NCBI GenBank assembly: GCA_965637545.1
Contig: OZ281501.1
Coordinates: 1,116,001-1,180,000, forward strand
From: Phallusia mammillata
Lineage: Eukaryota
DNA length: 64,000 nt
Reading direction: 5' to 3'
Positions 15,050 to 64,000 of this stretch are shown here, one piece after another; the first letter of the stretch is position 1; the number at the start of each line of letters is the position of its first letter. The notes beneath the pieces are model-generated. The model did not search any database and was not told the DNA's origin. It saw nothing but the letters and a program-made list of their open reading frames with translations. The translations under genes and the position numbers were made by a program.

Positions 15050-18000
15050 ATGTTGAAACAACTGTTACTGGTTTTGTGTTTGGGCACCTTGAAAGCTCAA
15101 GGCTTCTTCTATTTCAAAAGTAAGTATTAAAGCTCTGCGTTGGTGTCTGTGTTAAAAATAATTTACAAACCGCTATGTAAGTTTGTTTTAATGCAAAAAA
15201 CGTATATCAGGCTATATCTCACGGTACTTAACCGAGCAGAGTGAAATATATGAATATAAACTACTTGGGATTCCATTAAAACTAACAAGAGTTACCAAAA
15301 TAACTGCTGCTGAATAGGCTTTGCGTTAGTGTTTGCTTTAAAAACGTGTGTAAGTTTGTTTTAAAGCATGCTCTGAATATTACAACAACAAGATAAAAAT
15401 GCCAGTTGAGATAACTACAAACATTCACTAATTGGGATGCCACTAAATAACCCAAAACAGAGTCACTAAAACACTTTTTGCAAAACGCAAATATTAAATG
15501 CTTAACTTGCTTTTAGGCAACTGTGATAAGTGGTGCTTTACGGACACATCTTGTCAAGTACCTGGCAACGACACGTGTACAAGATGTCTCCAAGATGCAT
15601 GTGGTAAGTTTGCAATCACTTTTGTGGCTTCTATCCCTAATTTAAACCAAGAGTTCAAAAACGGGCCGCTAATTTGAATTTTTGGGATAGTGTAAGAGAC
15701 TTTTCTTCACATGTACGTGGTTAAACAAACGCACACTTTCTAGAAACAAGACTAGAAATTCTAGAAGCCTACATTAAAGTGAAAGTACCAGTGATGTACA
15801 AAATTCTAGCACAAAAAAGTTATTTCTGATTACCAACGATCGGCTAAAATATTGTTTTACGCGACAGGAAAAGACTTTAACGATCCTTTCGACTCCTATT
15901 TCGGATACAACTGCATCCAATACGCATCCCGGTCAAGCTGGAAGTAAATGTCTGTCTGATTGAGTTGCCAAAACTTCTTTTTTCTAGCTTTGTTTGCAAC
16001 ATAAAATGTTTAGTCTTGCGAAAAAAGTAAGAAAAAGTTTCTAATGTCTTAAATTGTTGGTTTTTGTCACGTCAGGTGTAAAACCAAAAAAAGTTGCCAC
16101 AAACTAATAACCACATGCTTAGCAAAGCCGATACCAAAACGTTTTTCGTTATTTCAACTATCACAGTGCGCTAGTACTCAACCTTTCTATCCATAGACCC
16201 CTTTCCCTCTTAATATAATCTTAAATTGTAACTGAACTTCAACTGATTGTTTCAGGGGAAACGGTGAATGTTACGAGCAATGTGGATCCCAGTCTTACTG
16301 GACAGCTAGATCCCGCAGTCGCAGTTGCAGAAAGTGCCTCAGATCCTGTATTGGTGAGTGGGATTCAAATAATGGTTGTAAGCAAACATGAAATCGGGTC
16401 TAAACCCCAAACACAGTCCGAAACCCGACCCGAACCCGATTTTATTTTCACAACCTCGAGGCCTGAAGGTTGAGTTGAGTTTATTTTGCTTGGTGAAAAC
16501 ACATGGCGTCACATTTGCACTAAAACAATCACCAAGTCGGAAATAGCTACCCAACGTTGAAGCGTTATGTCACTGGGGCTCACAAGTTGGTTAAATTGCG
16601 GAGAAAATGGGGCCGTGTGTGTAGTTAAACCCGAACCATGGCCCTTTTCATTCAAACTCAATCCCTGCGCCAATCTCACTCTCTGGTGAGCTACCGCCAC
16701 ATAATGCTTTGTAACACGGGTAGCTGCAGCGCGTTTAGTTACGAGCCACCAATTGTGATCTTCATTGTTTTGCGCTCCACAACGTTTTAACATTGCGCAG
16801 CTATTTACAGCTTAGTGATTGTTCAGTGCAATTTTGTCGCTGTGTGTTCTTTCACCAAGCGAAATAAACTCAACTCAACTAATGGTTAATCCAGCCTTCA
16901 CAGTACCTTCCACCTTAGAGTGGAATAGTTGACCTTCACACTGGTTCAAAACCTAACGTGCTAACAAACGCTTGTAATACACCTTTGGGATCTGTGATCA
17001 GGTGAAGCTGAGGACACTGGTACATTCTGCAACGCTGAGGACGAGACGGCAAGACGCAAACGCAGCCACGACCGTTTCGAGCCCGAATACAAATCAGGTC
17101 CCAGCTACTGTAAGGGTTGTGTCAATAACCAAACCTGCCCAACTTTGGAGGAACTGTTCGATTCTGCGCCCAAGTTCTGTCGTGATTATGTGGAGATTTC
17201 TTGTGGCAAGATCCCCGAGCAGTTGATGGGTAAATGTTTTTATTTTTTAGGTATAAGTGTTTTAACCAGTTATAATCGAAACCGGACGCCTTTCCTCGTT
17301 GTACACTAAAACCCTATTTAGGCTTGAAAGTTAGATTTACAAGGTCAAATTACGACGCAATTGTGAGCAAGTGTAAAGTCAGGCCCGAATCAAGCCAATT
17401 AATTTTATTCAAGCTTCAGCCCGTAGCCGACTTAAAGCGCCTGGCTCTGCATTTAACTTTAACGTGGAAATAAATAATTGAACATTACACATTTAATTTA
17501 TTTTTAGTATCCCGTTCAAATGTGTAACAACCTTTGCACAGTTCAAAATCATTCGCAATAAGCGGGAATATTTGAAAGCTTTGCAAAATAAAGGCAGTGC
17601 GCTTGCCCGGTGGACAGTTAAAACTTTTTTGCGTTATCAAAATGGGAATGAACGCAACTATTGACCCAATTGATTTATTGTCAAGAGCAGTAGTAATACT
17701 AATTCAAAAACATCCCTAAAATGACCCACCCGTGTGTATAAATTTGTAAACTATCGTTAGAAAGACGATTTTGTACCAGGCTTCACATTAATGCATACAC
17801 ACGGTTCCCTAATGCGCAGTGACGACACAAAGCTTAATACACAAACCGACAATAGCGTTTCCGATTTATTTCCGTACACATCAGGTGCGCACAATGTGCC
17901 ATTGTATGTGTGTGCGGCACGCTAATGCAGCATAAGGGGAGTTCGAATTCGTGTTTTGCCGGAAATATTTTTTCCGTTCCCACTGATGACAGTTTGGTAA

Positions 18001-21000
18001 CAACACCTGTACTGTACACTGCTGTTGTTGATTTTCTAAATGCCTTAGTGTTATTAGTATAGATTTACCCTATAAGTGAAGCAATTTTTCTTATTTTTAC
18101 CACGACCCCTATAAACAGTGGTGGGATTCAGCCGGTTCGCACCGGTTCTATGGTACCGTCTCACTACATTTTATGAGATCGGCGAACCGGTTAGCATAAC
18201 TGGTTACTGTCAATGAACTTTTTGTAACAGAGCCGACTGAAAAATATGACTTTTGTGATAGAACCAGCTGACAAAAATTTGAATCCCACCACTGCCTATA
18301 CATATATAAAACATAAGTGTAAACTCACTCTAGCTATCAGACATAATTTAAACCTAATACAGCGTTTGAATATGTTCAAACTGCGATCAGCTCTGTACGT
18401 TCCTGTAGACTAGCGATCACGACATATTGCTTGGTGGACCGGTTTGATTCGGTTTTTAAGGATAAAGGAAGACAGATGTCAGATGAGCTATAGTTGGTTT
18501 AGATTTAAAACATGACTAGAAAAAGCAATATTTCCAATACAGTCACCAGAAATGGCGTTGTGCGCATAATATATTATTGCCACAAGTGGCGCCAAAGAGT
18601 CTTTGTCGCTCTAAAACTTAAATGAAGCTGTTGTATCTACATGACTGGAATGCTTGCTCTAAATCAGGGGTGTGCAACCTGCGGGTCAAACGTGGCCTAT
18701 TGGTTAAAGTTTGTGCGGCCCGCAGAGACGCTCAGATTTCAAATATACTGGAAAACAAGTCCAATTATTACGTATTAAATTAACGCGTTTCTTTCGCGTG
18801 TCCCCCTTTCACGAAAGCGTTACACAAAGTGGCTCAATAAAAAACGCGGACACCAAATCAACGACAATTCGCTTTAATGGTATGGTCAATTCCGCTTTTC
18901 TTCTGCGGAAAAACGGAAGTATATAAAGCGTCAATCGCACTACAACACGCAGTATAGTGAACATACCGACAGTTTGGCTACAGGGGTTTTGACATTGATG
19001 GTTTGAAAGGCTCTTGCCCCTATGTGCCGGCGCCCATGCCACGAGGCAAGTTGCAAAATAATTGCAACATGCACGGTAAGCAGGCAATTGACCTCACGCA
19101 ATGGAACACTAACTGTTGCGTCACACGGTTATACGTTTTGCCGGACAAAGTTATATTCACAACTGTTGACAAAAATGACGTAACATTTACGTTCGTTTAT
19201 TAAAATTAAAAATCAATTCGTGTTCGAAGTTCTTAACCATGCAGGTTAAATCGACCTCTAAATTTTAATTTGATATGCTTAGAGGTCAAATACAAGTAGA
19301 CAGTTTTTTTTATGTATGCGGGTTTAGTGTGTGAAACAACTTAAAGTTGTCTTCTGTCAAATTTATCTTCAAAAAAATCGGGAAAACGAGGGATTTTTTC
19401 GGTTATCGTGGGCACCCCATAGTTGTGCAGGATGAATTTTTACTATTTTGTTTCAACAGACGAAGACATGAACACTTGGAATATCAGCTGCATCAGAACT
19501 GCGTGGAGCGATTCTTGCTCTCGTTGCCCAGATTTTAACGAAACTCGATGGGACAACTGCGAAAATTGCTTGGATGCTTGCAAACGTAAGATAAAGAACG
19601 GAAAGCGTAGCTTAGGTTTCGCACATACCTTAAATTCGCAATGATGAATGCTTTCGATCTATATTTCATCCATTTAATATGAGGGTAATGCAAAAAGAAA
19701 ATGGATTCTAAGCAAAGAGGTTTTTGTAGACAAAACATAAACCGTAAAAACATAAAAGAAGCAAATAACCTTATGTATGTTAATTCTCATGAATTAAAAT
19801 ACAGTTGCGGCACAAACTGGGAACAAATACAATACTTTCTACGAGTGGTGGGATTCAAATTTTTTGTCAGCCGGTTCTATCACAAAAGCCATATTTTTCA
19901 GCCGGTTCTGTTACAGAAAGTCCATTGACAGTAACCAGTAATGCAAACCGGTTCGCTGATCTCATAAAATTTTATGAGACGGTTCTACAGAACCGGTGCG
20001 TACCGGCTGAATCCCACCACTGCTTTCTACTAATACTAAGAATTATTCCTAATATATTACCTATGTTGTAACGATTCCAACCTAACTGAAGATGCTTAAT
20101 TGCATAAGCGAAATATATTTGTTTTTTAAACTAAAGCCAAACTGATTTCAACCTTGAAATAAACGTTTCAACCTGTGTGAGACTTTTCACCATGTTATTT
20201 TGTTGTGCAGCCAAGGTGGAATGCGCATTGGAATGCCCAAAAACTGGCCAATACCCGATGACCATCCCTTGTGGCTACTGCTTGGCGCTGTGTGAAGGTA
20301 AATGCGTCGTCTGATTACATTGAACATGTTAGGAAACCAACTTTAGCAACGTGCCTCTATACTTGTTCATTTTTTTGGGTAAACAACACAGAAATTTACT
20401 CGCTGAAACTAGTTACCATGAAAGCAGTTTAGAGAAGCTTTATAACAAAAAATAAACGTTAGTATATTGATTCCAGTTGTGAATTTATGTTCTTCTTAAC
20501 TGTATTACAACAGTTTACAACTTTGTTTCACGACATGAGTCTTTCCGGGACTCGCGCTCTACCCACTGAGCTACACAGGCTCAGTAGTGAAAGTCGAATC
20601 ACAAGCACCGTTGTCTTCCATGTCTGTACGCTGCACATGTCAGTTTCGTTGCACGGGATAGCCAGTTCGACCATTGATTACCTAAAGATGAATACATTTT
20701 TACTGGGAACATGACCCATGCAAGTTTGAATCCCACCACAGGCTTGATTTTTCTAGTCGTTTTGCCTTAATTATCATGTCTGGGAATGCCTAGTAGACCG
20801 GCTGATTCAGTATGATGCCTTTAATGGGTCTGGCTTACTACGGTTCCATTTCGTTGGAAAATTTCCAAAATGCCTTACACTAGTAAAAAAATGTACAAGC
20901 CTAAATTTTGTAAAGAAATATTAAACCTTTTTGCCTTCGCAAAAACATTTGCTTGTTGGAGTGAATTGTTGCTATTACTTTATGTAACCACTGTATTAAC

Positions 21001-21300
21001 CCACTCCAGTGTACACTAATGTTTTTGTCTATTACAGCATCAGGCATAGCAGACTGCAACACAACCTACTGCCAAGCAGAATGTACACGCTGTAATAGTT
21101 GTTACATTGCATGTGAAGCTGGTGAGTGCTTACTCCCTTGTAAAGTTGCATAACTTTAGTTATTTAGTTAAGTCAATGCTCGTCAAACCATACAAACATT
21201 TGCGTTTCTTGCTCTTTAAATGAGTCGATTTTTTGCAGATGACTTTATTGAGAATGAATGCACCTGCATACCAGAAAAGAAGGGTTACTGGTGGTATTGA
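15050..21300 (+). CDS. Secreted Cys-rich protein, copy A (305 aa, 37 Cys in the mature part, furin-type RRKR site); family not recognised
   Basis: Exons 15050-15119, 15517-15603, 15868-15943, 16256-16353, 17002-17229, 19460-19585, 20211-20297, 21038-21121, 21239-21300 total 918 nt in frame, all GT-AG. Signal peptide MLKQLLLVLCLGTLKAQG. Ends ECTCIPEKKGYWWY*. Exon-by-exon homology to B, C, D, E and G. Confidence 0.88.
16469..16879. repeat. ~410-bp element with ~40-bp terminal inverted repeats
   Basis: GTTGAGTTGAGTTTATTTTGCTTGGTGAAAACACA at the left end; TGTGTTCTTTCACCAAGCGAAATAAACTCAACTCAAC at the right end. Confidence 0.75.
18116..18294. mobile_element. hAT MITE (CAGTGGTGGGATTCA family), copy 2, inverted
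   Basis: Same TIRs. TSD CCTATAAA/CCTATACA. Confidence 0.9.
19843..20022. mobile_element. hAT MITE (CAGTGGTGGGATTCA family), copy 3
   Basis: Perfect TSD CTTTCTAC at 19835-19842 and 20023-20030. Absent from the paralogous A' start region. Confidence 0.9.
20527..20746. pseudogene. tRNA-like element split by a local inversion (paralog at ~57690-57910)
   Basis: The minus strand at ~20527-20580 reads GCCTGTGTAGCTCAGTGGGTAGAGCGCGAGTCCCGGAAAGACTCATGTCGTG. The plus strand at ~20725-20746 reads GTTTGAATCCCACCACAGGC. Joined, they give complementary acceptor, D, anticodon and T stems. Confidence 0.6.
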
Positions 21301-24515: not shown

Positions 24516-26490
24516 ATAAAGTTTGCATTTGTGTTTTTTATGTTGGTCATTATTCTACAAAGTGAAATTGCAAATTGTTAGTAAATGTTTTGTTTTTGTA
24601 ATTTACATTATTCAGCTTCATTTTTTGTTACAGCTTGCTCAAAATGGTGTTTTCACAAGAAGCGATGTTACCCACCAGTTGACGATGATTGCTCAATGTG
24701 TCTCAAAAACTTTTGTGGTATGTTACTAAATGTCGACAGTTTGCTTCTCACTTTAAACTTATTTTTGTTTATAACAGGAGAAGAGTTTGAGCATTCATTC
24801 GAGACAAACTTTGGAAATAAGTGCATATTCAGAGCGATGAAAGATAAGAACAAATGCAAAAATCGATGTGCAAAAATGACGAACAAACAACTGAAACGAA
24901 AGAGGGATGCCTGTGATGACTGCCTTGACATGTGCATTTGTGGGTTTTTTATTATTTTTTGTTAAACATTTATAACAACCCAATTTCTAAAGTGCACAAA
25001 TAAATGCACTAAGTATGCCCCTTGAACTTGAATAGTTGCGAAATTCTTTTTATCATAATTCGTCAGAAAAAATAGGACACATTTAAACAGATCTTACCAA
25101 AATTTTTTTATTTTAGCTGAGGCCAAAGACAATCCCGAAAATTATTGTAATGGCCATGTTCCACACAAAAACATGTCAGAAGATGCTTCTTCTCCCAAGC
25201 CAACCAATCCCATCAAAATGGCATTCAAGAAAAAGAAGAATGGTGATCGTGGTGATGATGAACATGGAATTGTGCATGGTTGCGACATATGCTATAATGA
25301 TACATATTGCCCTACTCTTGAAGAATTTTATGAAAATATTTCTATAGATTGCCTTGGATATATTGCGCTGAAATGTGAACGTAAGTATAAATGTGTTTGT
25401 TATGTTTACTTGTTTGCAATGTAAAGCATGCATAAAGCGTTTAGTGTTTTTCATGTCATTATTTCAAACTTAGAAAATGCATCTGCACTTCCTCATTTAT
25501 GAACTGCCAAACATCTTTTGGGCATTGTTACAAAACTTTAACTTTTTTCAGTTCTTGCTGACTATAATCAAACGGAGGAGGAATACTTGGCATGTCTTAT
25601 TATAAATTGGGCTGATATTTGCTCAGGATGCCCTCTTGATTGGTTGGAAAGGTTAGCGGCTTGTGGTGATTGTCTACTGACTTGCGAAGGTATATGTCAA
25701 GCAAACTTGTTTTTTGTTGTTGATACTTATGACATCATTAATTACTTAAAGAAACCATCTTGAAAATAGATGACAGCTGAGTTAAGATCTTAAACTCATT
25801 ATTGTATAACTTTGGTTTTAATAACAGTTAACACAGGTTTTACTATAGTAAACATTTTACATTGCAGAGAAGATTGAGTGTGCAAAAAATTGTACCCATA
25901 AACAAGCATGTTATCCAAAGGGCTTGCGATGTGATAAATGTGCAGCCATGTGTAGAGGTTAGTAATATATTACTGGTGTAATTGTCCAATCACTTTTGCA
26001 TCACAAAAACCAATCAATGTACCAGAATAAAAACTTGCTTTTAATATGAACATCAGTAAATTTAAAGGTTATCTTAACTATCTTCAATAGCATTTATCAT
26101 ACCACATGTCTAATTAAAGTCTTGCCAAACTCACTCATGTTTTACGATTTTTGGGGAAAAACAAAATAATGTTGTGTTTTTTATTGCTCTGCAGCTTTGG
26201 GAGGTGATTATGATAGCTGTATAGAAAACAGATGTCCTGAATGTATAACATGCAATGAATGTTATGTTCAATGTGAAGCCGGTGAGTAACATGAATCAAT
26301 TTCCATTTCTAGAATGACAGATAATCACAAAAAGAATTATGAAAATTTAAGTTGTATCCCTAAATAATTCTGCTAACTGTAAAACTGGTAGCCTCTGTAG
26401 TAAACCTGTAGTAATAGTATCTTGTCTTTTTCAGAAAAATATACAAATAATCGCTGTGGCTGCTTTGATGGCTATTATTATCCATGGTGA
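24516..26490 (+). CDS. Secreted Cys-rich protein, copy B (38 Cys); start codon uncertain (ATA at 24516 or ATG at 24540)
   Basis: Exons ~24495-24576, 24634-24717, 24778-24939, 25117-25380, 25552-25689, 25868-25957, 26195-26281, 26435-26490, all phase-1 GT-AG and in frame. Includes SCSKWCFHKKRC. Ends RCGCFDGYYYPW*. Confidence 0.82.
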
Positions 26491-29400
26491 ACATAAAAAG
26501 TTCCATTCTGTTGACCACAAACTATCCTTACTTTACATCCAAATTCATTTTGCATCAATTTAGTATTTGTTAGTGTAAAATACTTATCACCAAACGGGCT
26601 CTGAAGTATAGAATTTAACCATCAGTTATCTATGATTTACCAGTCGCATTTAAACTTTTGCACAAACAATGTCGTAAACTTGTAACTAAAAAATGCCGGT
26701 GTAATTATTGTGTCCATTGCTGTTGTCTCACCCAGTGTCTCATCATAATAAACAAGAAACAAAAAACTGATTCCCTGGAGTAAGTGGTTCTGCCTATTGC
26801 AGTTGTTTTTTAAGTGTTTTCTTCAAAAATGGAGTTAACACAGATTCTACATAATTAACATTGCATCAAAATTGAATAAATTCTGAAGTTATACTTGAAG
26901 TATTGCACCAGGGTGTGCTGACAAACTGTATATTTATTTTAAATAAAGTAACCAGTGGTTTTTGAAACAATGTACTTCTATAGGCAACATTAGCCAAAAA
27001 AAACTCTAGTGGTCCATGTAAAAGTGTCTTAGTGTGCAACCAAATATACAAACTACAAAATCATATTTTTACTATGGTTATATTCTTTGTGTTTTGTATC
27101 TGTGCTTTAAAAACCTATGAAAATCAATTCACCAAAATTTTATGATTCTTAACATGCAAGATAAGTTAACATGTGCACTTGATAAAGTCTCTATATGTAA
27201 AGACATGAAAAGTTTGAAAAAGAAAAACTTTTTCAGTAAACATTTGGAGAAGGATGTTAAAGTCCAAGTTTGAAACGTTTTAAGTGGTACTTGCTGAGTG
27301 AAAATATGTTGCAAAATTATTAACTGCCGAACAGAGCCCAGCATAAAACCAGGCAACAATTGCAGTATCTCTGAAACGAAAATGGATACAAAAATAAAAT
27401 TTTGACACAATATTCTATGCTCTGTAAGCTGTTCAGCACACAAACCTTTTTTTTAGATTTTTTGTGCAGTTTAGTCAGTTGTTAATACAACAACATATCA
27501 CATAATATAAAAACTGTATTTGAATGACATGCTAACTTCATATTTTTTTTTATATATATTTAATGTTACAGCTAAACATAGTTTTTTGTCATCTTATTCA
27601 ATCAACAAAAGTTTGTATGACTGCAGATTACATATTTTTATTAAAATTGAAATGTGGAGTAGGTTGTTTGTGCAGGAAATGGAAATTATCATTACTGTCA
27701 TGTGTTAATTAACTTTGATTTGAAGATTTAAATAGGCTTTCTTAATCTTACTTTATGGCAAATTCTTATTTTGCTTCAAAAACAGGCTTTTAAAACTATC
27801 AAAAACATTTTAGAAGGGTTAAGATGTTTTTCTCTTTCCTTTTGTTCAACATCAGTCAAAACACTGACGATCTAAGCTTTTGTCTAAAAACTTGAAGGTA
27901 ATGTTGACATAAACCAAAGTAAGTGTATGCAATACACAATTCATTTAGAAAGCATAATATTTTGTCCATAATTTTAAACATATTTTAAACATGTGGTCAT
28001 CACCATCCAGGCTAATATTGTGTTTGTTTGTTTAACCTTTGCTTCACACAAAATATTTAATGATAATGCAACAGACATACTACTGCTGCATGACCCAGTA
28101 TAGATACAAAGTTTTAGATTCATGTGTTTTACTCATTTGTCATTGTATGTGTAAAATAGGAAGAGCCCTTAGCATTTGCATTTAAAACCACACTGTAGGG
28201 CTTTGACATCTTTTTACAGCTTGCAACCACTGGGTATAAATAGAACTCGTTTGCCAATTTCAAGCATTTAATGTTATTAAGAGACATATGTTTAATTATC
28301 GGTCTCCTGAAGGGAACACATATGTGGAAGTTTGTCAATGCACTTTTGGCATTAATTGTTTAAAAGATTTGGATGAAACTTTTACAGATATGGTCATGTA
28401 GATTTTATTTACCCCACTAGCCCCCTAGAATGGGTGAATTTTCAACCAATGTTTGAATTGAATAAATTTTGACATGTTGTTCATTTTGCCATAGTTAGGT
28501 GTCAATTGTTGTTTCACCCTATAACCCCAGTTTGTGCACATTTTTAGATCTCAATTGTCAAGTTTTCTCATGCAGTCAAATCAGTTGCTCCATTTGCCCA
28601 CTAAAAAGGGTAAACTTTTTTAACATTGCATTTTATAAAATTCGGACAGTTTTGTAGAATAAGCCATTTTGACCTGTTAATTGTTATGTTTTATCATGTA
28701 GCCCCACCATTTAGCGCAGTAACCTCTAAAATGAGTAAATTTTGCAAACAATAGCTGAATTGAATGCGACTTGTATAGTTTGCAAGTCCAATAGCATGAA
28801 TATTTCAGCACATTATTATAACCAAGCTTTAAATCATAGCACCACAATTTGTGGTAGTTATTTCATGAAATACATTGTTTAAGAAACAACTAAGGTTATA
28901 AAAGAAAGTGGCTTATATGGGACTGTTATCAAAAAAAGTTTAGGATATATGCATATGTTCTTGTTGATTGCAGTTGCAGCATTGCTGGTTGATATAATGC
29001 AATAGAACAATACACAGCTCTGCACAACACACTAAGGATGGAAAGAAAATGTGGATTGCTTATCAGAAATGTGATTAATACATTTTCCAAGAAACAGGCT
29101 CGGTAACAGCAACAGAACAAAGCACCACAAACATGTGAGAATAAGTCATCTTCCGCTCTATCCTGGCAAAGGAAAAAAGGTAAATCTGCAAGCTTGCATG
29201 GTGTTTAGATGTTGAAAACAAACTATGAGTAGCTAGCTGTGCAATGTGTCCTTTGTGATTCGCCCCTTCCAATCACATGACAATAAGCATGCCACAAGAC
29301 TGCAAGAGTCAATTGGTATTTGCAGGCTTTGCATTTTATTGCTGCAGTATTCGCCCAACAATACATTTCAGTTGTTCCAAACATTAACAAATTCACAGAC

Positions 29401-29666
29401 ACTCTCCCTTAGCATAAAATTAACTATATACTGAATTTAAAATATTCAAAGAAATTTATTTTGTCAATCATGTGATACATTAGCTAATTTGTTGCAACAC
29501 TGCAAACCAAACCGTGCTGCCGTTGCAGTGATATCGCCTGCCAATTCAACCGGATAAATATGGGTTTGGGTTGTGATTAAGAAGCTATTAAAGACCTGGA
29601 ACAGTTTAACTTTGTGAAGACGCATTCTTCGAATTGGCAACTTGGATGCAGCACGTTGTAAATGTT

Positions 29667-30434: not shown

Positions 30435-33400
30435 ATGTTTAAAGTTTTGTTTGGATTGTTCCTTTTTGCTCTTGTCCTAGAGTACCAGCAGACAAACGGT
30501 AAGATACATTTCTGGGGTTGATATTATTGCTACCCAATACATACGTGTCTTGCTGTTTAGGGCATCTTGGTAAAAGCCCAAATATTTTCCTTTACTTTGT
30601 AGCATATTGTTTTGGTTGAATTCTTCAGTTAACCTTTCTTAGGAATAATTAGCTTTATTGCATCCAGTTAACTCATGAACTTCTATTTCAGCCTGCCCAA
30701 GATGGTGTTTCGCCAAGAACAGGTGTTACTTGCCAGTGAACGACTCATGCACCGATTGTCTCAAAGGCGTTTGTGGTAAGTACAATAGTCAGTTCACCAA
30801 TAACTCAGTTAATGTCATGCTACAACAAAGTAAATATCTCTGTACTGCTTCTGTATTTATGTCTATAGCGTGAAATTCGATACTGATCAACAATAACCAC
30901 AATATGGTTTGTAATCGTCAAGTGTATTGGGACAATAGGTTAAAGATTTTTAATACCGTGTTGTGGACCAAATGTTGCATGTTTTTGCTCATGGCAAATT
31001 ATTGCATTGACTATATAAATAGATGCCGGTAGTGCGTTAGTAGTATCAAGAACGCAACCTTAATACAAATCTGTCTGCTTTCTGATTTCTATTTAAATCA
31101 ATTAACACAAATCTCTTTTACACTCAAACTGTTTTCACGCGAAGTTATTACCAGTTTTGCCGATTCTTGTAGTACTGTTGTTTTCAAACTAAAAAGGAAG
31201 AATTACTATTGTTCTGACAGGCGAAGACTTTCCAAAGCCATTCAAAACTGAGTTTGGAAGAGCCTGTGTCTTTCGCGCCATGAAAAGAAACGCAGATTGC
31301 AAAAAAGAATGTGGATCAATCAGTACGAAGAAATTAAACAACTACAACAAGGCTTGCAAAAAATGCCTTCGCCCATGTATTGGTAAGTTTCAAAGTGGAA
31401 TTTACAAAGTTGGGATTTTGTATTTCTTACTAATTTTTTTGGGTCTTTTATAAGTCGTTGAAAACAAAAACTTTTTAATAGGTGTTCGGCAAACTAACAA
31501 ACTTGATATTGATATTTTTTCCGACTCCTATTCGTAATAAAAAACACAAAATGTCATTCAGCAAACTTCAACGTGATAGATAAGGACAAAAATCAAGAAA
31601 ATAAGGTTTTAACTATGCCTTGTACATTCGCATTTCAATACAAATCCCTGAAACGTGAAATCCTGTCATAACGAGTATTTTCGCTTCATATGCGTGTTGT
31701 AACTTTTCATGCGATTTTGTAAAAACTTCTTGCTTGACTTTGTCCTTGAAAATGAAAAACTCACGTTTGTTTTGTAGAGGAGGCCAAAGAAACGCCAGAA
31801 AATTACTGCGAGGGTACTCTCCCAGAACCACCACCACCTCTCCCAGCAGCAAGTTCCCCATTCGATCCTGTAAAACTGGTGAAGGAAATGATGCAACCAA
31901 GCGCCGACGATAATATGACGATGACTTCTCGACCATGCGGTCCCTGTTACGACGGAACGAGCTGTCTAACTGACATGGAGACGGAACAACTGCCGCCGTT
32001 TTGCCTCACGTACATCTTCACAAAATGCTCAAGCAAGTGCAAAATAATATTCTTTAAAAATATGGTTTAACTTAATGATTTTTTTTTAAATGCAAGCGAT
32101 CCCGATTTTCGGTTTATCGCAAGTTTGTTAAACGTTAATGTCTGCAGTATTTCTAAATTGTGAGCATAACTTGGTCCAAACTCGTCATAAGTTCATTAAC
32201 AAATACGTCAAAGAGCTGAAGCTGGTGGTTGTGGATCGGCCAAATGAGCTGAACGATTTCTCGTCGCCGGCTGCACTGTTGAGACCTTCTAGGTCCAAAC
32301 GGTGTGCACTGTCTGCAGCTTATCATGTGATAGCTCTATGCTTGTAGATCAGTGGTTCCCAACCTGGGGTTCGCGGACCCCCTGGGGGTCCGTGAGATGG
32401 TTTTAGGGGGGTTGGAAACAATTTTTAAGTTGCCAAACCGTTTTTTACAATTCTGCATACAAGTGCTAAATGTTTATCAAACCTTTGGATCAAAAATTTA
32501 ATTTTTTTGATTTTTATGTGATTGCTACCTCCATTGTGACATCACAACACACATGAACAATAGACTTTATAGTGCTTTGTTCAAAGTGTACACCATAAAA
32601 TTTATTTATTTCTTGCAGTGGCTGGTACTAATTCTTTAAGGACTGTGGGGGTTGAATAAAATGCTGCCTCAAAAAGCGAAAGTATAAGAACATGTGATGC
32701 AAGAAACGAAAAACATAACAAGACTAGACTACTTTGGGGGTCCGCTGACCTATAAAATTTATAACAGGGGTTCGTGACTACAAAAAGGTTGGGAACCACT
32801 GTTTTAGATAAATAAGTTTATAGTTTTCGAAAATTTTTGATTTACACAGTTTGGTGACTTATATTATCTTTGTAGTGGACCCAGGCGGCCTAAATGCCTT
32901 CGAGTGCCTCGCCCAGAAATGGGCAGATCCATGCTCTGAGTGTCCCGGCGACTTCGATGTAAGCCGACTTCCGGCCTGTGGAGACTGTCTCCTTAATTGT
33001 TCAGGTAAGAAAATTTGTAATACTACGTCACTACAAATGTCATGCTTGCTAACAAACAGTGATCACAAGCAAATTTGTAAAACAGTCCAAAACGTTTGTA
33101 CGAAAACCTAGCACACGTTGTTCGTAAAAACACAAAACCTGTTTTAAACTTGATTGCAAGACACACAGGATGACGTCACAAATAATGACGTCATACGTTT
33201 GCTCAAAGCTTAGAACATGACTTTAAAGCAGCTACGCCTCTTTTGATAGATCACTCTAATAATGTACAGGTAAATTTTTATTATGAAGTCACGGTCACAT
33301 TACGTCATAGGTTCACTTGTGACGAAAACTTTGTGATGCTTAACACTGCAAATTATTAATCAGAATTTTGTGCGGGCCCTTGAACAAACAATATTGTATT

Positions 33401-49682: not shown

Positions 49683-52600
49683 ATGTTTGGATTGTTCCTT
49701 TTTGCTCTTGTACTAGAGTACCAGCAGACAAACGGTAAGATGCATTTCAGGGGTTGATATTATTGCTACCCAATATATACGTGACTTGCTGTTTAGGGCG
49801 TCTTGGTAAATATGTAAACGTTTTCCTTTACTAGTAGATTTTTTCTGTTGAACTCTACTCAACTTTTTTGCGGATTAATTAGCTTTATTGCATCCAGTTA
49901 ACTAATGAACTTCTATTTCAGCCTGCCCAAAATGGTGTTTTGCCAAGAACAGGTGTTACTTGCCAGTGAACGACTCATGCACCGATTGCCTTAAAGGCGT
50001 TTGCGGTAAGTACAATAGTCAGTTCACCAATACCTTAGGTCCAGGGTCGGTAACCGAGGAGTTCGTTACCTTTTCAGGTTAAATGCTGCATTTTGCCCAT
50101 GTATCCCGGTGATGATAAACTAATTTAAGCGTTTTATTGCAAAATACTTGTTGTTTTTTTAAGACCTGTACGCAATAAAATTTTACTGTTAAAAAAGGTC
50201 CGCAGTGCAAAAAAGGTTACCGACCCTTGTAATAGGTCATATGTTTTCAATATCATTTTATTCACCAAATGTTGCATGTTTTTGCTTATGGCAAACCATT
50301 GCATTGGCTGTAAATAGATACCGGTAGTGCCTAGTAATATCAAGAACACAACCTTAATACAAATCTGTCTGCTTTCTATTTAAATCAATTAGCTCAAATA
50401 TTTTTTACACTCAAACTGTTTTCACGCGAAGTCATTACCAGTTTTGCCGATTCTTGTAGTACTGTTGTTTTCAAACTAAAGAGGAAAAATTACTATTGTT
50501 CCAACAGGCGAAGACTTTCTGAATCCATTCGAAACACAATTTGGAAGAGCCTGTGTCTTTCGCGCCATGAGAAGAAATCCAGACTGCAGACAAGAATGTG
50601 GATCAGTCAACAAGAAGAAATTAAACAACTACAACAAGGCTTGCAAACAATGCCTTCGCCCATGTATTGGTAAGTTTCAAAGTCGAATTTACAAAGCTGA
50701 GATTTTGTATTTCTTGCTGATTTGTTTTCGATCTTTATCAAGGCGTTGTTATTGTTTGTTTTTTCGGAAAAACATAAGCTTTTTACTAGGTGTTCGGCAA
50801 ACTAACAAACCTGATTTGTTTCCGGCTTCCATTTGTAATAAAAACACAAATTGTTATTCCGCTAAAATCATATTAACGATATACTAATACATAAATCGTC
50901 CTGATCCACGCATGCTGAACAGACGATTTCAGTCACATATATTGACATTTATTAGCTGACTAATTCAGCACACTTTAATCAGTCTGTATATTTATTATTG
51001 CAAAACCTTTGGCGATCGATTTCGCCCAAATATATGGCATCGTCAGTCCTTATTCAAATAGAATACCTAAAATCAATGTGATGTGTAAGAACAAAAATCA
51101 ACAAAATAAGGTTTCAACTTTGCCTTGTACAATCGCATTTGATCATAAAGCCCTGAAACGTGAGATCCTGTCATGACGAGTATTTCGCTTTATATGCGTG
51201 TGGTAACTTTCCACGCAAATTTGTAAAAACTTACTGCTTGACTTTGTTGCCTGAAAACGAAAAACTCGCGTTTGTTTTTTAGAGGAGGCCAAAAATGCAT
51301 CAGCGAACTACTGTGAGGCCCCCCCAGGTCCCCCAGGCCCCCCAGGCCCCCCAGGCCCCCCAGGCCCTCAAGCCCCTGCATCACAACCCTTAGCAACAGA
51401 CTTTCTAATCAATCCTGTAAAACTGGCGATGGAAGTGATGAAACCGAGCGCCGCCGAAAATGTGACGATGCCTCCCCAGCCATGCGCTCCCTGTTACGAC
51501 GGAACGAGCTGTCTAACTGAAATGGAAATGATTGAAGTGCCACCGTTTTGTCTTACATATCTCCTTTTAAAATGCTTATGCAAGTGAAAATTGATATTCT
51601 TTAAAAACAAGCTGCAATGTTTACCTTGGAGCAGTTTGTTTTTTTGCAGATTTAGGCGATTTTGTTTTACTGCATATCAAGTTTAAAAGCTTTAGCCAAT
51701 CATTAGTTACGAAAATGTTTCGGTCCTCACTTCGCAAAAATGGATTTGACTTGACAACGCGACCTGCATAGGACGTCAAACGTCGGAATGAAACAACAAT
51801 TGCTAAAAAACTCTATAAACTAAATGTTATGCCTGGCAGCAATATCTTATTTAAATAAGTTGATAGTTTTTTAAAAGAAATTTTGGCCTACACAGTTCAG
51901 TGACCTCTATAATCTGTGTAGTCAACAACGAAACCGACACCAACCAAACGACCTTGGAATGCTTTGCCGAGCATTGGAATGATTCATGCTCTACTTGTCC
52001 CGTAGACTTTGATCGTACGCTGCGAAGAGTGTATCACTACTTGTCCAGGTAAGAAACTTTGTAAACCTTCGCCATTACAAATGCCATGCTTGCTAATAAA
52101 CAGTGATCACAAGCAAATTTGTAAAACAGCCCAAAATGCTTGTACGGAAACCTAGCACACGTTGTTCGTTAATAACACAAAACTCGTTTTAAACTTGATT
52201 GCATGACCCAGAGGAAGACGTCACTAACAATGAAGTCATATGTTTGCTCAAAACTAAAAAAATGGCTTTGAGGTGACCGCATCCAAATTTGCAAAACGGT
52301 CATGCGTTCGTAAACACATAAATAGCTAGCTACGACTCTTTTGATAAATTACTCAAATATATGCAGACAAGGTATTTTGTGACGTCACGGTCGCATTACG
52401 TCATTGGTTCACTTGTGACGAGCACCTTGTGAAATCTGCAATATATCAATCTGACTTTTTGTGCAAGCCGTTGTATGTTGTTGTTGTTTGTTTCAGAAAG
52501 GATCACATGTGGATTGAGCTGCCCGTTTAACAGAACAATGTACCCAATGAAGATGCCATGTGCAGAATGCGCTAGTCTCTGCAGAGGTGAGTTTACCTTA

Positions 52601-53514
52601 AATATTAATACAGCCCTTCACAAATTGTTGCCTAATTATTTCATCACATAATATCAGAGGTCGCCGGCCGCGGATAAACTGCTACCATGAGTTCAAATCC
52701 CACCGCAGGTTGCATTTTTTAGTTTTCATTGGAAAAGGCCCTCGATTAGATATTTCACAAGCGTAAAATAGCTACAGGCTGAAAACGTTGGCAAGTCTGA
52801 AGTTGTCCATCGTGTTTTGGGATTATATATAACTTATATATAGTTTTGTTGGACTTACATTTACTGCCATAAGGTTCGTTATGGTCTTCATCCACCAAGC
52901 AATCAACTGGATGTTTAACTTTACGTTTCGAGAATACAATTAGGTGTAGAACGCTAATTATTCACTTCATTTTATCACTCTGGTAGTTTTGCTTTAAATC
53001 AAGCCGCTTTTGTTGCAGTTACACCTGGTGATGTAGATGAGTGCATTCAGAAAAAATGTCCGGATTGTGCCGATTGTGACACGTGTTTTGACGATTGTGG
53101 AGCTGGTGAGTACTTGGTCCGCTCATTTGGTTGGTCATACCCTGCGAATTTATTGGCGTGCTTGAGTGAAGCTAACATGGTACACATGAAATCGTCAGGA
53201 ACGCTTGGTACTGATGGGTTTGCACGGTTCATGGCGCGACCTAAAAATTTCTAAACGCATTTGGCCAAAAGACGTAAATCAGTTAAAACAACGTCATAAA
53301 CGAGACGGGTTAATCAAATACGTGTTTGGAAAATCTTTCAAAGCAGTATTTTAAAGCTTAGAATTTACTGTGGTGCAAGATGTGTGGAATGTAAACAATA
53401 ACAAACCAAGCCTAACACAAAAGTGCTTATTTTTACCCCACATAACACTTTCACAATTTATTGCTGCTTTTTAACTAAAATAACCTCGTTTCCCGACCTT
53501 ATAAATTTTTGTAA
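49683..53514 (+). pseudogene. Cys-rich protein copy E (frameshift in exon 5, last exon broken)
   Basis: Exons 49683-49734, 49922-50005, ~50508-50669, 51283-51579 (GC donor), 51922-52048 (11-nt deletion vs D), ~52497-52586, ~53020-53106. The exon-8 acceptor is deleted at ~53485. Confidence 0.82.
50041..50229. mobile_element. MITE in intron 2 of copy E
   Basis: TIR C(C/A)AGGGTCGGTAACC / GGTTACCGACCCTTG. Absent from the C paralog intron. TSD only partly conserved. Confidence 0.65.
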
Positions 53515-54172: not shown

Positions 54173-54870
54173 AACAAAAACAGATACATTTAACACAGGG
54201 AATTAGGTATTTGTCCAACAAAATATCTCTCAATAACATTAAAAACGAGTTATTTCTATACCGAGTGTTTGCAAGCTGGTAAAAAGGTGCCAAAGGCCTA
54301 CAGTGTGTTGTTAAAAGCAAATGATAGCGCAAAATAGGAGGCTTTTACTGTCATCAACGTTGTTTTTTGAAAGGTTTGAAACGATTTAAATGCGAACATT
54401 TAGTTGTTAAAAAGGCGTTTGTCCTCATTAGCCCCTCATTTTAAGTGAACCCTATAAAGCTTTTAATCTGATTACACTTAAAAAAAAACTAAACAAATCA
54501 CGTATATCTGGTTTATTATGATGACATCGAAACGGTATTCATTCAGCAAAGTTTAGTTAGAGCATAAAAGGTTGGAAAACAGTTTTACTTAAATATTTGA
54601 TAACAATAAAAAAGAAGATTGGTGACGTGGTTGTTTGTCGACATCTAGGTAGTCTTCTATATTCATAGCAAAAATTCATAAGGTCCGAAGCAACGGCATT
54701 GATTCGTCGCGAAACCCTCTGAAATAGAAAAGTGAACGACATGAGTAACACGTGTTGATAAAAAGTAAGGTTGAGAAGCGGAAGGGTTATTTTAGTTAAA
54801 AAGCAGCAATAAATTGTGCAAGTGGTTTGTGGGGTAAATAAATTAAAAACGCAAAATTTTAGTTTTCGTA
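54171..54870 (-). pseudogene. Inverted fragment of a C-type unit: intron 7 end, exon 8 (54718-54663, EGFATNQCRCFGPYEFLL*), 3'UTR and spacer
   Basis: The reverse complement matches 44655-44990 and the 35700-35880 spacer. Confidence 0.82.
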
Positions 54871-57344: not shown

Positions 57345-58459
57345 ATTAGTAAGAATCATTCCCTATTCTGTGACCTATCGATTTCCACCTTACTGAAGAT
57401 GCTTGTAATAGCGGAATATATTTGCTCCTTATACTAATAACTAAGCTAACTATAGCTAACTCAGCCTTGAAATAAACGTTTCCAACCGTGTGATACTTTT
57501 CACAATGTCATTTGTTGTGCAGCCAAGGTGGAATGTGCATTGGAATGTCCCAAAACTGACCAGTACCCGATGACCATCCCTTGTGGCTACTGCTTGGCGC
57601 TTTGTGAAGGTAAATACGACAACTTCATCTGATTGCATTGGAACATGTTAGGAAACCCACTTCAATGCGTCTCTACTTGTTGAAATTTACGACAGGAGTC
57701 TTTCCGGTACTCGCGCTCAACACACGAGCTACACAGGCTCGGTGGTAAGCCCGTCGAAATTCGAATCACAAACACCGTTGCCTCCCCTGTACGCTGCACA
57801 TGTCAGTTTCGTAGCACAGGATTTAGCCAGTTCGACCATTGATTACCTAAGATGAATACATTTTTACTGGGAACGTGACCCATGCTAGTTTGAATCCCGC
57901 CACATGCTTGATTTTTCTAGTCTTTACCTTAATTATCATGCCTGGGAATGCCTAGTAGGCCGGCTGATTCGGTATGGCGTCTTTAATGGGTCTGGCTTAC
58001 TACAGTTCCATGTCGAATGGAAATTTCCAAAATGCCTAACACAAGAAAAAATTATAAACTTGAATTTTGCAAAGAAAGAGAGAAACCTTTTTGCCTTCGC
58101 TAACACATTTGCATGTTGGAGCGAATTGTTGCTATTACTTTATGTAACCACTGTATTAACCCACTCCAGTATACACTAATGTTTTGTCTATTACAGCATC
58201 AGGCATAGCAGACTGCAACACAACCTACTGCCAAGCAGAATGTACACGCTGTAATAGTTGTTACATTACATGTGAAGCTGGTGAGTGCTTACGCCCTTGT
58301 AAAGTTGCATAACTTTAGTTGTTTGGTTAAGTCAATGTCCGTCAAACCATACAAACTTTTACGTTTCTTGCTCTTTAAATGAGTCCATTTTTTGCAGATG
58401 ACTTTATTGAGAATGAGTGCGCCTGCATACCAGAAAAGAAGGATTACTGGTGGTATTGA
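57345..58459 (+). pseudogene. A': 3' half duplicate of copy A (last three exons 57523-57609, 58197-58280, 58398-58459)
   Basis: PKVECALECPKTDQYPMTIPCGYCLALCE / ASGIADCNTTYC... / DDFIENECACIPEKKDYWWY*. Upstream exons are replaced by the MULE remnant. Confidence 0.85.
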
Positions 58460-61571: not shown

Positions 61572-62429
61572 CACTAAGCATTCATCAAGAGGCAATTGGT
61601 GGTAATTACAGGCTTTGCATTTTATTGCTACAGTTTTTGGGCAAAAATGCATTTTAATTGTTCCCAACATTAATAAAATTAGAGACACCCTTAGCATAAA
61701 ATTAACTGTACACTCAATTTAAAATATTCAAAGAAATTTGAAGACGTGGAACAGATAAACTTTTCGTTGAGAAAACAAATTCTAAATGTTCAACTTGGCT
61801 GTAGCACTTTGTAAATGTTCACATCCAAAATCCAAATAGCGGCTGTGTTGAATGAAACATCATCTAGTGGGCATATACTTAGTAGGAGCGTGTTTACCGA
61901 TCACGTGTTGTTGGAACGAGCTTTAGGAGACAATCGAATATAATACACCAAAGCTAAGTCATCTTCCGCAACCGAACACACGAAACCCTCTTCGACAGGA
62001 ACTGCTCACGTACACGAAGAAGGCAGGAGTTTTATACAAATCGAGATACACTTAACTGGTGTGATCAATAGCATTAACATGTTATTGCCTGGCAGTGTGG
62101 GCAAGTTGTTCGATGCGTTGGGTCCGGTCCGGTTAATAAAATGCTTAGTTTATTCGCAAGCCTATGACTTGTAACTATTAAAAACGTTTCCTTGTTTAGA
62201 ATTGGTAAGGCAAGTAACTAAGAACAATAAGCAAGGTTTTAAAGGAGTTTATTCGTGAGCAAAACTGTCAAATAACGTATTCATTTAATACCGTACGGAG
62301 CTATAACAGTGGACGATGTTTGAACGAACTCTACAGTAAACTCTTATTTTATGTTTATGGTGACCTGCTGTATATTGTCTGTGTTTTTAAAATTGGAATC
62401 ATTTTCAGGTTTAAACCGACTTCGGAAAA

Positions 62430-64000
62430 ATGTTGAAAGTTTTGTTTGGATTGTTCCTTTTTGCTCTTGTCCTAGAGTACCAGCAGACAAACGGTAAGAT
62501 ACATTTCAGGGGTTGATATTATTGCTACCCAATATATACGTGACTTGCTTTTTAGGGCGTCTGGTAAAAAGTCCAAACATTTTCCTTTACTTTCTAGTCG
62601 ATTGTTTTTGTTGAATTCTACAGTTAACCTATTTTAAGAATAATTAGCTTTATTGTATCCAGTTAACTAATGAACTTCTATTTCAGCCTGCCCAAGATGG
62701 TGTTTCGCCAGGAACAGGTGTTACGTGCCAGAAATGAACGAGTGCACTGATTGTCTCAAAGGCGTTTGCGGTAAATACAATAGTTAGTTCACTAATACCT
62801 CAGTTAATGTCGGGTCACAATCAAGTAAATCATAATTTATAATTTACAGATAATCATCTGTACTGCTTTTGCATTTATGTCTATAGCGTGAATTGGCTGT
62901 GATGTTAATGAGCAACAATAACCACAGTATGACAAGTCAATATTGTTTGTAATCGTCAAGTGCATTAGGACATCAGGTTATAGATTTTTAGTGTCATGTT
63001 ATAGGCCAAATGTTGCGTCATGGCAAACCATTGCATTGACTGTAAATAGATACCGATAGAGCCCTGATAGTATCAAGAACGCAACCTTAATACGAATCTG
63101 TACGCTTTCTGATTTCTATTTAATCAAACACATCTCTTCTCTTTTGCACTTAAACTTTTTCACGCGAAGTCATTACCAGTTTTTCCGAATATTGTAGTAC
63201 TGTTGTTATCAAACTAAAGAGGAAAAATTACTATTGTTCTGACAGGCAACGACTTTCTAAAGCCATTCGATACACAATTTGGAAGAGCATGTGTCGTTCG
63301 TGCCATGAGAAAAAAATCAGAGTGCAGACAAGAATGTGGAGCAATCAACAAGAAGAAATTAAACAACTACAACAGGGCTTGCAAAAATTGCCTTGAGCCA
63401 TGCATTGGTAAGTTTCAAAGTCGAATTTACAAAGTTGGGATTTTGAATTTCTTGCTGATTTGTTTCGTGTCTTTTATAAGTCGTTGAAAACAAAAACCTT
63501 TTCAAAGGTGTTCGGCAAACTAACAAACTTGATATTTATATTTTTCGGCTCCGATTCGTAATAAAAAACAGAAAACGAGTATTTCACTCCATATGCGTGT
63601 TGTAACTTTTTCATGCGATTTTGTGAACTGCGTGACTTGGTTGCCTAAAAACGAAAAACTCGCGTTTGTTTTGTAGAGGAGGCTAAAGAAGCATCAGAGA
63701 ATTACTGTGAAGGCCCAGCCCCTCCATTCCCCTCAGGCCCCCCAGGCCCCCCAGGCCCTCCAGGCCCCCCAGGCCCTCAAGCCCCTGTATCACAAGCCTT
63801 AGCAACAGACTTCCTAATCAATCCTGTAAAACTGGCGATGGAAGTGATGAAACCGAGGGCGGCCGAAAATATGACGATGCCTGCTCAACCTTGCGGTCCC
63901 TGTTACAACCCCCAAAGCTGTCCAACTGAAATGGAGATGAATGAGCTGCCGCCGTTTTGTCTCACATATCTCCTCTCAAAATGCATGAGCAAGTGCAAAT
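62430..64000 (+). CDS. Cys-rich protein copy G (5' part; runs off the window)
   Basis: Exons 62430-62493, 62687-62770, 63246-63407, 63677-63988 (GC donor). Linker NYCEGPAPPFPSGPPGPPGPPGPPGPQ. Confidence 0.85.

What the first reader, a model, noticed from the sequence alone, without database searches (positions are those of the whole stretch)
15050..64000. Unrecognised, rapidly evolving tandem family of secreted 37-38-Cys proteins (best candidate for a new system)
Seen: at least six full or near-full copies (A, B, C, D, E, G) plus A' and fragments. All have a signal peptide, an almost invariant Cys skeleton, very divergent inter-Cys residues (A/B/C), several N-glycosylation sequons, and aromatic C-termini (GYWWY, GYYYPW, RPFEFL). 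A and C have an odd Cys count (37), implying a free or inter-chain thiol. I recognise no known domain. Inference: a birth-and-death multigene family typical of antimicrobial, toxin, allorecognition, gamete-recognition or metal-binding proteins.
Basis: partly seen in the sequence, partly recalled or inferred. Interest (0 to 1): 0.85.

Follow-up and report, generated by a model that had tools for sequence, protein, structure and literature searches.

The report
Orphan sea-squirt 37-cysteine secreted protein array
This stretch holds a real, transcribed tandem family of sea-squirt genes for secreted proteins built from six small disulfide-stapled modules, one per exon. No homologue turned up in the exon-by-exon searches that were possible, and its function (defence or metal handling are the best guesses) is untested.

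Summary
On the + strand lie A (15050-21300), B, C, D, E, an A-like 3' fragment F, and G, which runs off the window.

- **Census:** the array continues outside the window with a 98-aa short form (Gs) and H. A lone copy, I, lies 5.6 Mb away, giving 10 loci in the genome.
- **Architecture:** A, C, G, H and I are intact at 305-330 aa. Each has a signal peptide, six 5- or 6-Cys modules (one per phase-1 exon), a Pro-rich hinge and a CxC aromatic tail. The mature proteins have 37 Cys.
- **Damaged copies:** B has lost its start codon. D and E are broken.
- **Transcription:** RNA contigs reproduce five of C's seven introns, including a GC-AG intron. H appears highly expressed.
- **Searches:** Pfam, PDB sequences, an exhaustive HMMER search of 1.84 billion proteins (module 2 only) and the ESM Atlas (two queries) gave nothing.
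- **Evolution:** the Cys spacing is almost invariant, while other residues change at nearly the neutral rate (dN/dS 0.74-0.86).
- **Fold and relatives:** two modules fold as low-confidence helix-loop-helix. Spacing resembles ascidian turgencins and vanabins, but membership of either family was not shown.

I read it as a new lineage-restricted family of secreted disulfide-laddered hairpin repeats. A humoral defence or binding role is the likeliest function. That function is inferred, not shown.

The parts
15050..21300 (+). Gene A, intact, 305 aa, 38 Cys (one in the signal peptide). Exons: 15050-15119, 15517-15603, 15868-15943, 16256-16353, 17002-17229, 19460-19585, 20211-20297, 21038-21121, 21239-21300. 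Module 2 is split by an extra phase-2 intron.
   Evidence: all junctions are AG/GT, the frame is open, and the protein ends ...GYWWY*.
24540..26490 (+). Gene B, 305 aa, 38 Cys, with short introns. Exons: 24540-24576, 24634-24717, 24778-24939, 25117-25380, 25552-25689, 25868-25957, 26195-26281, 26435-26490. The ancestral start codon is ATA. Only a 12-residue leader remains before module 1.
   Evidence: The upstream frame is closed by a TGA and has no earlier ATG (read).
30435..34269 (+). Gene C, intact and transcribed, 307 aa, 37 Cys. Exons: 30435-30498, 30692-30775, 31221-31382, 31778-32032, 32876-33004, 33415-33504, 33851-33937, 34217-34269.
   Evidence: Model. RNA contigs carry joints 30497>30691, 30774>31220, 31381>31777, 32032>32876 and 33936>34216 with 0-1 mismatches.
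32033..32875 (+). GC-AG intron 3 of gene C (donor GCAAGT). The same donor is present in E and G.
   Evidence: The joint 'skips 843, GC..AG' appears in run X18.
36952..44781 (+). Copy D, a probable pseudogene. Exons: 36952-37015, 37203-37287 (+1 nt in the A-run 37210-37214), 37883-38044, 38460-38687, 39008-39142, 39593-39682, 40281-40367, 44726-44781. The last intron is swollen to 4.4 kb.
   Evidence: Translated from the signal exon, the frame breaks in exon 1; the other exons are open.
45380..48255 (-). Ty3/gypsy-type retrotransposon pol (RT, RNase H, integrase zinc domain) inserted between copies D and E.
   Evidence: RVT_1 5e-23, RT_RNaseH_2 8e-30, Integrase_H2C2 3e-14.
49683..53105 (+). Copy E, a pseudogene. 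Exons: 49683-49734 (start region rearranged), 49922-50005, 50508-50669, 51283-51579 (GC donor; contains a GPP repeat), 51922-52048 (11-nt frameshifting deletion near 52010), 52497-52586, 53019-53105.
54669..54719 (-). Inverted last exon of the C/D/E type (EGFATNQCRCFGPYEFL), downstream of E.
57523..58459 (+). Fragment F: A-like exons 5 (57523-57609), 6 (58197-58280) and 7 (58398-58459). It has no signal exon and no modules 1-4.
   Evidence: It is sister to A with support 100/99.
62430..64000 (+). Gene G, 5' part. Exons: 62430-62493, 62687-62770, 63246-63407, 63677-63988. Exons 4-7 lie beyond the window at L001:3308-5232. The whole gene is intact: 330 aa, 37 Cys.
28949..29458 (+). Intergenic block repeated upstream of copies B, C, D, E, G and H. 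It is part of the tandem duplication unit.
   Evidence: A genome-wide DNA search finds it at 8 places, all inside C8:1.139-1.188 Mb.

Best explanation
Shown:
- This is a lineage-restricted tandem gene family of 10 loci in a 240-Mb ascidian genome.
- Its intact members encode secreted proteins of about 32-34 kDa carrying N-glycosylation sequons.
- Each has a signal peptide and six modules, each encoded by one symmetric phase-1 exon. A Pro-rich hypervariable hinge lies between modules 2 and 3, and the protein ends in a short CxC aromatic tail.
- The Cys positions are fixed, while everything between them changes at close to the neutral rate.
- The array gains and loses copies. At least C and H are transcribed and spliced as modelled.

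Inferred:
- Each module is a helix-loop-helix hairpin. Its two helices would be tied by a ladder of up to three disulfides (CX3C on one helix, CX2CX3-4C on the other), as in the ascidian peptides called turgencins.
- The six hairpins form a stiff, protease-resistant rod or bow with alternating charge. Module 2 carries +4 to +10; modules 3, 4 and 6 are acidic.
- The 37th Cys gives a free thiol or a covalent dimer.

Committed reading, about 40% likely: an extracellular humoral binding or defence protein. Its variable surfaces would be displayed on an invariant disulfide scaffold and diversified by duplication.
For: - Anatomy and census.
- Splicing and expression: five joints of C, including GC..AG, in runs X16-X18. 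A contig of depth 505 joins a signal exon to an exact match of H exon 1.
- No homologue in the searches run.
- Helical hairpin: AlphaFold models of module 2 (helices 10-22, 24-30, 35-40, 46-49; pLDDT 65) and module 4 (helices 9-17, 30-42; pLDDT 63).
- Turgencin-type spacing: module 1 is 3-5-7-2-4 and B's module 5 is 3-5-6-2-3, against turgencin A/B at 3-4-8/7-2-3. Turgencins have C1-C6/C2-C5/C3-C4 bonds and a helix-loop-helix shape (PMC7024374).
- Diversification: dN/dS is 0.57-0.63 overall and 0.74-0.86 without conserved Cys codons. Exon divergence equals or exceeds that of several flanking introns.
- Birth and death: pseudogenes D and E, fragment F, short form Gs.
- Different paralogues are seen in different samples of one study.
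Against: - No functional data of any kind, and the tissue of the expressing samples is unknown because the runs are coded.
- The whole mature proteins are acidic (pI 4.7-5.4), unlike cationic antimicrobial peptides.
- There are no dibasic processing sites between modules.
- Profile comparison of module 1 with the turgencins is no better than shuffles (23 of 100 shuffles reach it).
- dN/dS below 1 fits relaxed constraint as well as diversifying selection.
- The module models have low confidence, and disulfide pairing was not determined.
- Full-length spliced proteins could not be given to any external tool, so all searches were made exon by exon and are less sensitive.
Confidence: 0.4

Rival explanations
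1. A vanabin-like extracellular metal carrier or redox protein. The modules would be divergent vanabin units, and the protein would bind or reduce vanadium (or Cu/Fe) in blood plasma or tunic of a vanadium-accumulating ascidian. Lys/Arg-rich module 2 would be the binding face and reversible disulfides the redox centre.
For: - The genome has a true vanabin cluster, so it is a vanabin-bearing ascidian.
- Vanabin units read C-x4/6-C-x3-C-x7/14-C-x2-C-x3/4-C. Module 2 reads C-x10-C-x3-C-x14-C-x2-C-x3-C.
- hhalign of module 5 against vanabin unit 3 scores 20.0 (probability 38%). None of 100 column shuffles reaches that score.
- The vanabin gene also has a phase-1 intron just after a 6-Cys unit.
- Module 2 carries +4 to +10 net charge. 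Vanabins bind V(IV) through Lys/Arg and act as V(V) reductases (PMC9486056).
Against: - Pfam Vanabin-2 finds five genes on another chromosome and nothing in this array.
- The module 5 profile searched over the whole genome does not retrieve the vanabin genes.
- No identity beyond the Cys residues.
- PDB sequence searches do not return vanabin2 even at E up to 10.
- Near-neutral change and copy turnover are unusual for a metal-handling protein.
- The whole protein is acidic.
Confidence: 0.2
2. A structural or cross-linking component of an extracellular matrix (tunic, adhesive or egg coat). It would be a stiff disulfide-rich rod with a Pro-rich or collagen-like hinge, a free thiol for covalent cross-linking, and an aromatic tail for binding cellulose or other polymers.
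For: - Odd Cys count, Pro-rich hinge with GPP repeats in E and G, and aromatic C-termini.
- High transcript depth for H in one sample.
Against: - Matrix proteins seldom show such fast change between paralogues with a fixed scaffold.
- No known matrix domain is present.
- The hinge is short and not conserved. A lacks the Pro-rich stretch altogether.
Confidence: 0.12
3. A gamete-recognition or allorecognition protein, diversified by sexual or self/non-self selection.
For: Tandem birth-and-death evolution, fast change at non-Cys sites and a secreted glycoprotein.
Against: - Earlier notes of this scan name the species as Phallusia mammillata, which a review lists as self-fertile (PMC9265791). That weakens a self-incompatibility role.
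- There is no membrane anchor and no ZP, EGF or other known gamete-coat domain.
- No run from studies P3-P5, whose tissues are unknown, held the sequence.
Confidence: 0.08

Closest known systems
Turgencins A and B (antimicrobial peptides of the ascidian Synoicum turgens; PMC7024374)
   Same: - Six Cys with no adjacent pairs.
- Spacing 3-4-8/7-2-3 against 3-5-7-2-4 in module 1 and 3-5-6-2-3 in B's module 5.
- Helix-loop-helix shape, which the module models also show.
- An ascidian origin.
- The genes for turgencins are unknown.
   Different: - Turgencins are free, cationic, C-terminally amidated peptides of 35-36 residues.
- Here the unit is one of six modules in an acidic 32-34 kDa protein sequence bearing N-glycosylation sequons, with no processing sites.
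- Profile comparison shows no similarity beyond the Cys residues.
- The disulfide connectivity here is unknown.
Vanabins (Pfam PF11437; vanabin2 structure 1VFI; PMC9486056)
   Same: - Ascidian-specific, Cys-rich and helical.
- Units of six Cys with CX3C ... CX2CX3-4C spacing.
- A signal-like N-terminus.
- A phase-1 intron after a 6-Cys unit.
- Tandem gene cluster.
- Weak profile signal to module 5.
   Different: - Vanabins have 18 Cys in a single core of about 90 residues, encoded by two exons.
- They are matched by PF11437 and lie on another chromosome.
- This family has 37 Cys in six one-exon modules and is not matched by PF11437.
- Its module 5 profile does not retrieve vanabins genome-wide.
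Plant alpha-hairpinins and their multi-module precursors (from my own knowledge, not tested here)
   Same: Helix-loop-helix peptides stapled by disulfides between a CX3C on each helix. Several are encoded as tandem modules in one precursor and have a defence role.
   Different: Those come from plants, have two disulfides per hairpin with CX3C on both helices, and have precursors cut into peptides. No sequence relation is expected or was seen.

Membership tests
Vanabin (PF11437) | Match to the Pfam Vanabin-2 profile above its 25-bit cut-off | tested here: not met
   - hmmscan of module exons gave no PF11437 hit at E up to 1 or up to 0.1.
- A genome-wide PF11437 search finds 5 genes at C1:24.53 Mb and none in C8:1.13-1.20 Mb.
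Vanabin (PF11437) | 18 conserved Cys (nine disulfides) in one core of about 90 residues (PMC9486056) | tested here: not met
   37 Cys arranged as six modules plus a hinge Cys and a CxC tail, over about 285 residues.
Vanabin (PF11437) | Repeat-unit Cys spacing C-x(4-6)-C-x3-C-x(7-14)-C-x2-C-x(3-4)-C | tested here: met
   - Module 2 is C-x10-C-x3-C-x14-C-x2-C-x3-C.
- Module 5 is C-x3-C-x12-C-x2-C-x3-C.
- This genome's own vanabins read 6-3-7-2-3 and 4-3-14-2-4.
This is spacing only, not proof of descent.
Vanabin (PF11437) | Profile-profile similarity beyond composition | tested here: inconclusive
   - hhalign of module 5 against vanabin exon 2: probability 38%, score 20.0, reached by 0 of 100 column shuffles.
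- Module 2: score 16.1, reached by 4 of 100 shuffles.
- The reciprocal genome search with the module 5 profile does not hit vanabins.
Vanabin (PF11437) | V(IV) binding and V(V) reductase activity | not testable with these tools
   Needs recombinant protein.
Turgencin-type peptides | Six non-adjacent Cys with spacing 3-4-7/8-2-3 | tested here: inconclusive
   Module 1 is 3-5-7-2-4 and B's module 5 is 3-5-6-2-3, against the sequences in PMC7024374. These are close but not identical.
Turgencin-type peptides | Sequence or profile similarity to turgencin A/B | tested here: not met
   hhalign of module 1 against the turgencins scores 9.8, and 23 of 100 shuffles reach it. The best module (module 6) has probability 11%.
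Turgencin-type peptides | C1-C6, C2-C5, C3-C4 connectivity; free cationic amidated peptide of about 36 residues | not testable with these tools
   Connectivity needs mass spectrometry or NMR. The sequence shows no inter-module processing sites, and the whole protein is acidic.
Any curated Cys-rich domain (EGF, TIL, WAP, Kazal, ShK, granulin, saposin and others in Pfam-A) | Pfam profile match | tested here: not met
   No Cys-rich domain family matched any exon at E up to 1. The only rows were chance-level and far below cut-off.

The most novel reading that the evidence does not exclude
The CX3C...CX2CX3-4C disulfide-laddered hairpin may be one ascidian-specific module that underlies three things so far treated as unrelated: vanabins, turgencin-type antimicrobial peptides and this six-module secreted family. 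This array would then be the first gene-level view of that superfamily. It would give the turgencins, whose genes are unknown, a genomic relative. It would also show how exon duplication of one hairpin built both metal-handling and defence proteins.
Probability: 0.15. Interest if true: 0.7.

Novelty: new variant of a known kind. Interest (0 to 1): 0.55.

Why it matters
Ascidians are the closest invertebrate relatives of vertebrates and rely on innate humoral factors, few of which are known at the gene level. Here is an expressed secreted family with no homologue found, a fixed 37-Cys scaffold, freely changing surfaces, visible copy turnover, and a one-module-per-exon design. That design makes exon shuffling and module loss easy to read; the short form Gs keeps only modules 5 and 6.

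It gives a concrete candidate for a diversifying recognition or defence protein. Alternatively it could be an extracellular partner of the vanadium system in a vanadium-accumulating species. It also offers a testable link between vanabins and turgencins. The odd Cys and the hinge suggest covalent dimers, which can be checked directly.

Tried and rejected
- **Pfam on every exon type:** nothing.
- **Exhaustive HMMER search:** the module 2 profile against 1.84 billion representatives gave 0 hits. A 53-position profile needs about 45 bits there, so distant relatives in other ascidians are not excluded.
- **PDB sequence searches:** modules 1, 2, 4, 5 and B's exon 1+2 read-through gave only chance rows.
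- **ESM Atlas by features:** B's exon 3 and B's exon 1+2 gave no usable hit.
- **Structure searches:** Foldseek against PDB and a shape search of the Atlas with the module 2 model gave only generic helical matches. That is not informative at pLDDT 65 and 53 residues.
- **Two-module alignment for folding:** attempted. MAFFT laid module 2 rows on module 1, which itself shows the shared spacing, so the alignment was not used.
- **Dispersed repeat as cause of the array:** rejected, because the intergenic block is array-specific.
- **Vanabin membership:** rejected on Pfam and on the reciprocal search.
- **The search for homologous proteins:** not used. Its length window cannot reach 305-330 aa proteins from stop-free stretches of at most 157 aa.
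- **Tool limits:** D's frameshift lies in an A-run and could be an assembly error.
Full report
**What is there**

The window is AT-rich eukaryotic DNA. Six-frame ORFs with high Cys density fall in repeated groups on the + strand from 15.5 kb to the window end. Self-BLAST shows tandem units.

I built gene models from three sources: tblastx between divergent copies, the compact copy B read base by base, and splice-site phase.

- The basic gene has eight exons.
- Exon 0 encodes a signal peptide. In C, D (with substitutions) and G it reads M(L/F)KVLFGLFLFALVLEYQQTN. A has a different leader, and E starts three residues in.
- Exons 1-6 each encode one Cys module.
- Exon 7 encodes a short tail: E-G-Y-x-x-N-x-C-x-C followed by aromatic residues.
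- All introns are phase 1. Gene A has one extra phase-2 intron that splits module 2.

The mature Cys spacing is almost identical in all intact genes. Identity between them is 32-65%.

**Census**

A profile of module 2 finds 8 places in the 240-Mb assembly. Profiles of module 5 and module 4 find 10 and 8 places. All lie in C8:1.131-1.196 Mb, except one lone gene, I, at C8:6.79 Mb.

I fetched the flanks, which showed:
- G is complete beyond the window end.
- A short derivative, Gs, follows. It has the signal exon, modules 5 and 6 and the tail, in frame: 98 aa with 13 Cys.
- Then comes an intact gene, H.

Status of each copy:
- Intact: A, C, G, H and I.
- B has an open frame, but its ancestral ATG is now ATA. 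Only a 12-residue leader is left.
- D has a +1 frameshift in an A-run of exon 1 and a 4.4-kb insertion in its last intron.
- E has an 11-nt deletion in exon 4, a rearranged start and an inverted last exon.
- F keeps only A-like exons 5-7.

A Ty3/gypsy pol lies between D and E. The intergenic block is found only within the array, so it belongs to the duplication unit. A tree of modules 5+6 pairs A with F (support 100/99) and groups D, E and G.

**Transcripts**

Runs of one study hold 5-10% of the 31-mers of copies C and E. Two DNA-like runs hold over 80%.

Laying four runs on C gave contigs that skip exactly my introns 0, 1, 2, 3 and 6 with 0-1 mismatches. These include the GC..AG intron 3 (32032>32876), so the runs are RNA and the model is right. 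Introns 4 and 5 were not covered.

A contig of depth 505 runs from the signal exon into 30 bases that match H's exon 1 exactly and match no other copy. H is therefore strongly expressed in that sample, while C is expressed at depth 3-7. Runs that hold E-type words hold no C exons, so paralogue usage differs between samples.

**Is it a known family?**

None of the following found a relative:
- Pfam.
- PDB sequences, at E up to 10.
- An exhaustive HMMER search of 1.84 billion protein representatives with module 2.
- ESM Atlas features.

AlphaFold models of module 2 and module 4 are helix-loop-helix at pLDDT 63-65. Structure searches with so small and uncertain a model gave only generic helices.

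**Resemblances**

Earlier notes of this scan name the species as Phallusia mammillata. I did not verify that. The genome does carry five tandem vanabin genes on another chromosome, which marks it as a vanabin-bearing ascidian.

*Vanabins.*
- Their units read C-x4/6-C-x3-C-x7/14-C-x2-C-x3/4-C, the same layout as module 2. Leaving out the first Cys, it also matches module 5.
- The vanabin intron is also phase 1 and follows a 6-Cys unit.
- hhalign of module 5 against vanabin exon 2 scores above all 100 column shuffles, but reaches only 38% probability.
- PF11437 does not hit the array, and the module 5 profile does not retrieve vanabins genome-wide.
- So membership of the vanabin family is not shown.

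*Turgencins.*
- Turgencin A and B have spacing 3-4-8/7-2-3, ladder disulfides and a helix-loop-helix shape (PMC7024374). This is close to module 1 (3-5-7-2-4) and to B's six-Cys module 5 (3-5-6-2-3).
- Profile comparison is at chance level.
- The family is therefore built like these proteins, without evidence that it belongs to either.

**Evolution**

- Between the intact genes C, G and H, dS is 0.35-0.43 and dN is 0.22-0.25.
- dN/dS is 0.57-0.63 overall, and 0.74-0.86 without conserved Cys codons.
- Several introns diverge by only 0.10-0.19, less than dN in the adjoining exons. This fits diversifying selection on the surface, or gene conversion acting on the introns. I cannot separate the two.

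**Features bearing on mechanism**

- The mature proteins are acidic (pI 4.7-5.4). Charge alternates by module: module 2 carries +4 to +10, and modules 3, 4 and 6 are negative.
- A lone Cys (ENYC) sits just before the Pro-rich hinge. Modules 3 and 5 have five Cys each. So three Cys lack a partner within their module, and one must stay free or bond between chains.

**Verdict**

- Anatomy, census and transcription are shown, with about 90% confidence.
- The helical-hairpin ladder is inferred, about 60%.
- The functional split is: humoral defence or binding about 40%, vanabin-like metal handling about 20%, matrix about 12%, gamete recognition about 8%.

Noticed in passing
G000:C1:24528397-24546053 (L005-L008): The true vanabin cluster: five tandem genes matched by PF11437. 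Each has two exons, with a phase-1 intron after the first 6-Cys unit and a His/Gly-rich stretch after the signal peptide.
   Followed up: partly
L001:7807-9320 (window-equivalent 68807-70320): Short derivative gene Gs. The signal exon is spliceable in frame to modules 5 and 6 and the tail (98 aa, 13 Cys). It is a vanabin-sized mini-version of the family. Whether it is expressed is unknown.
   Followed up: partly
window 32033-32875; 51580; 63989: A GC-AG intron (donor GCAAGT) is conserved in C, E and G. Copy D lost the G and now uses a GT one base away, still in phase 1. H and I use GT.
   Followed up: yes
window 32218-32900 and 33588-33724: Intronic stretches of gene C with very high RNA contig depth and tRNA-like loose ends (for example TCAGTTGGTAGAGCGCGAGTCCCGG). 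They are probably SINE copies expressed from elsewhere in the genome.
   Followed up: no
window 56127-57234 (-): Overlapping ORFs of 116-204 aa just upstream of fragment F that look transposase-like by eye but have no Pfam match. They may mark the rearrangement that truncated F.
   Followed up: partly
window 51310-51375 and 63736-63780: Collagen-like GPP repeats within the hinge of E and G only. The hinge is the most length-variable part of the protein: 42-61 residues between the flanking Cys, and only 26 in A.
   Followed up: partly
I judged this by eye from the ORF translations only.
   Followed up: no
runs X1-X4 versus X16-X19 (study P1): Samples of one study differ in which paralogue's exact words they hold: E-type in one set, C and H in the other. 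This could reflect tissue, developmental stage or individual copy-number differences.
   Followed up: no
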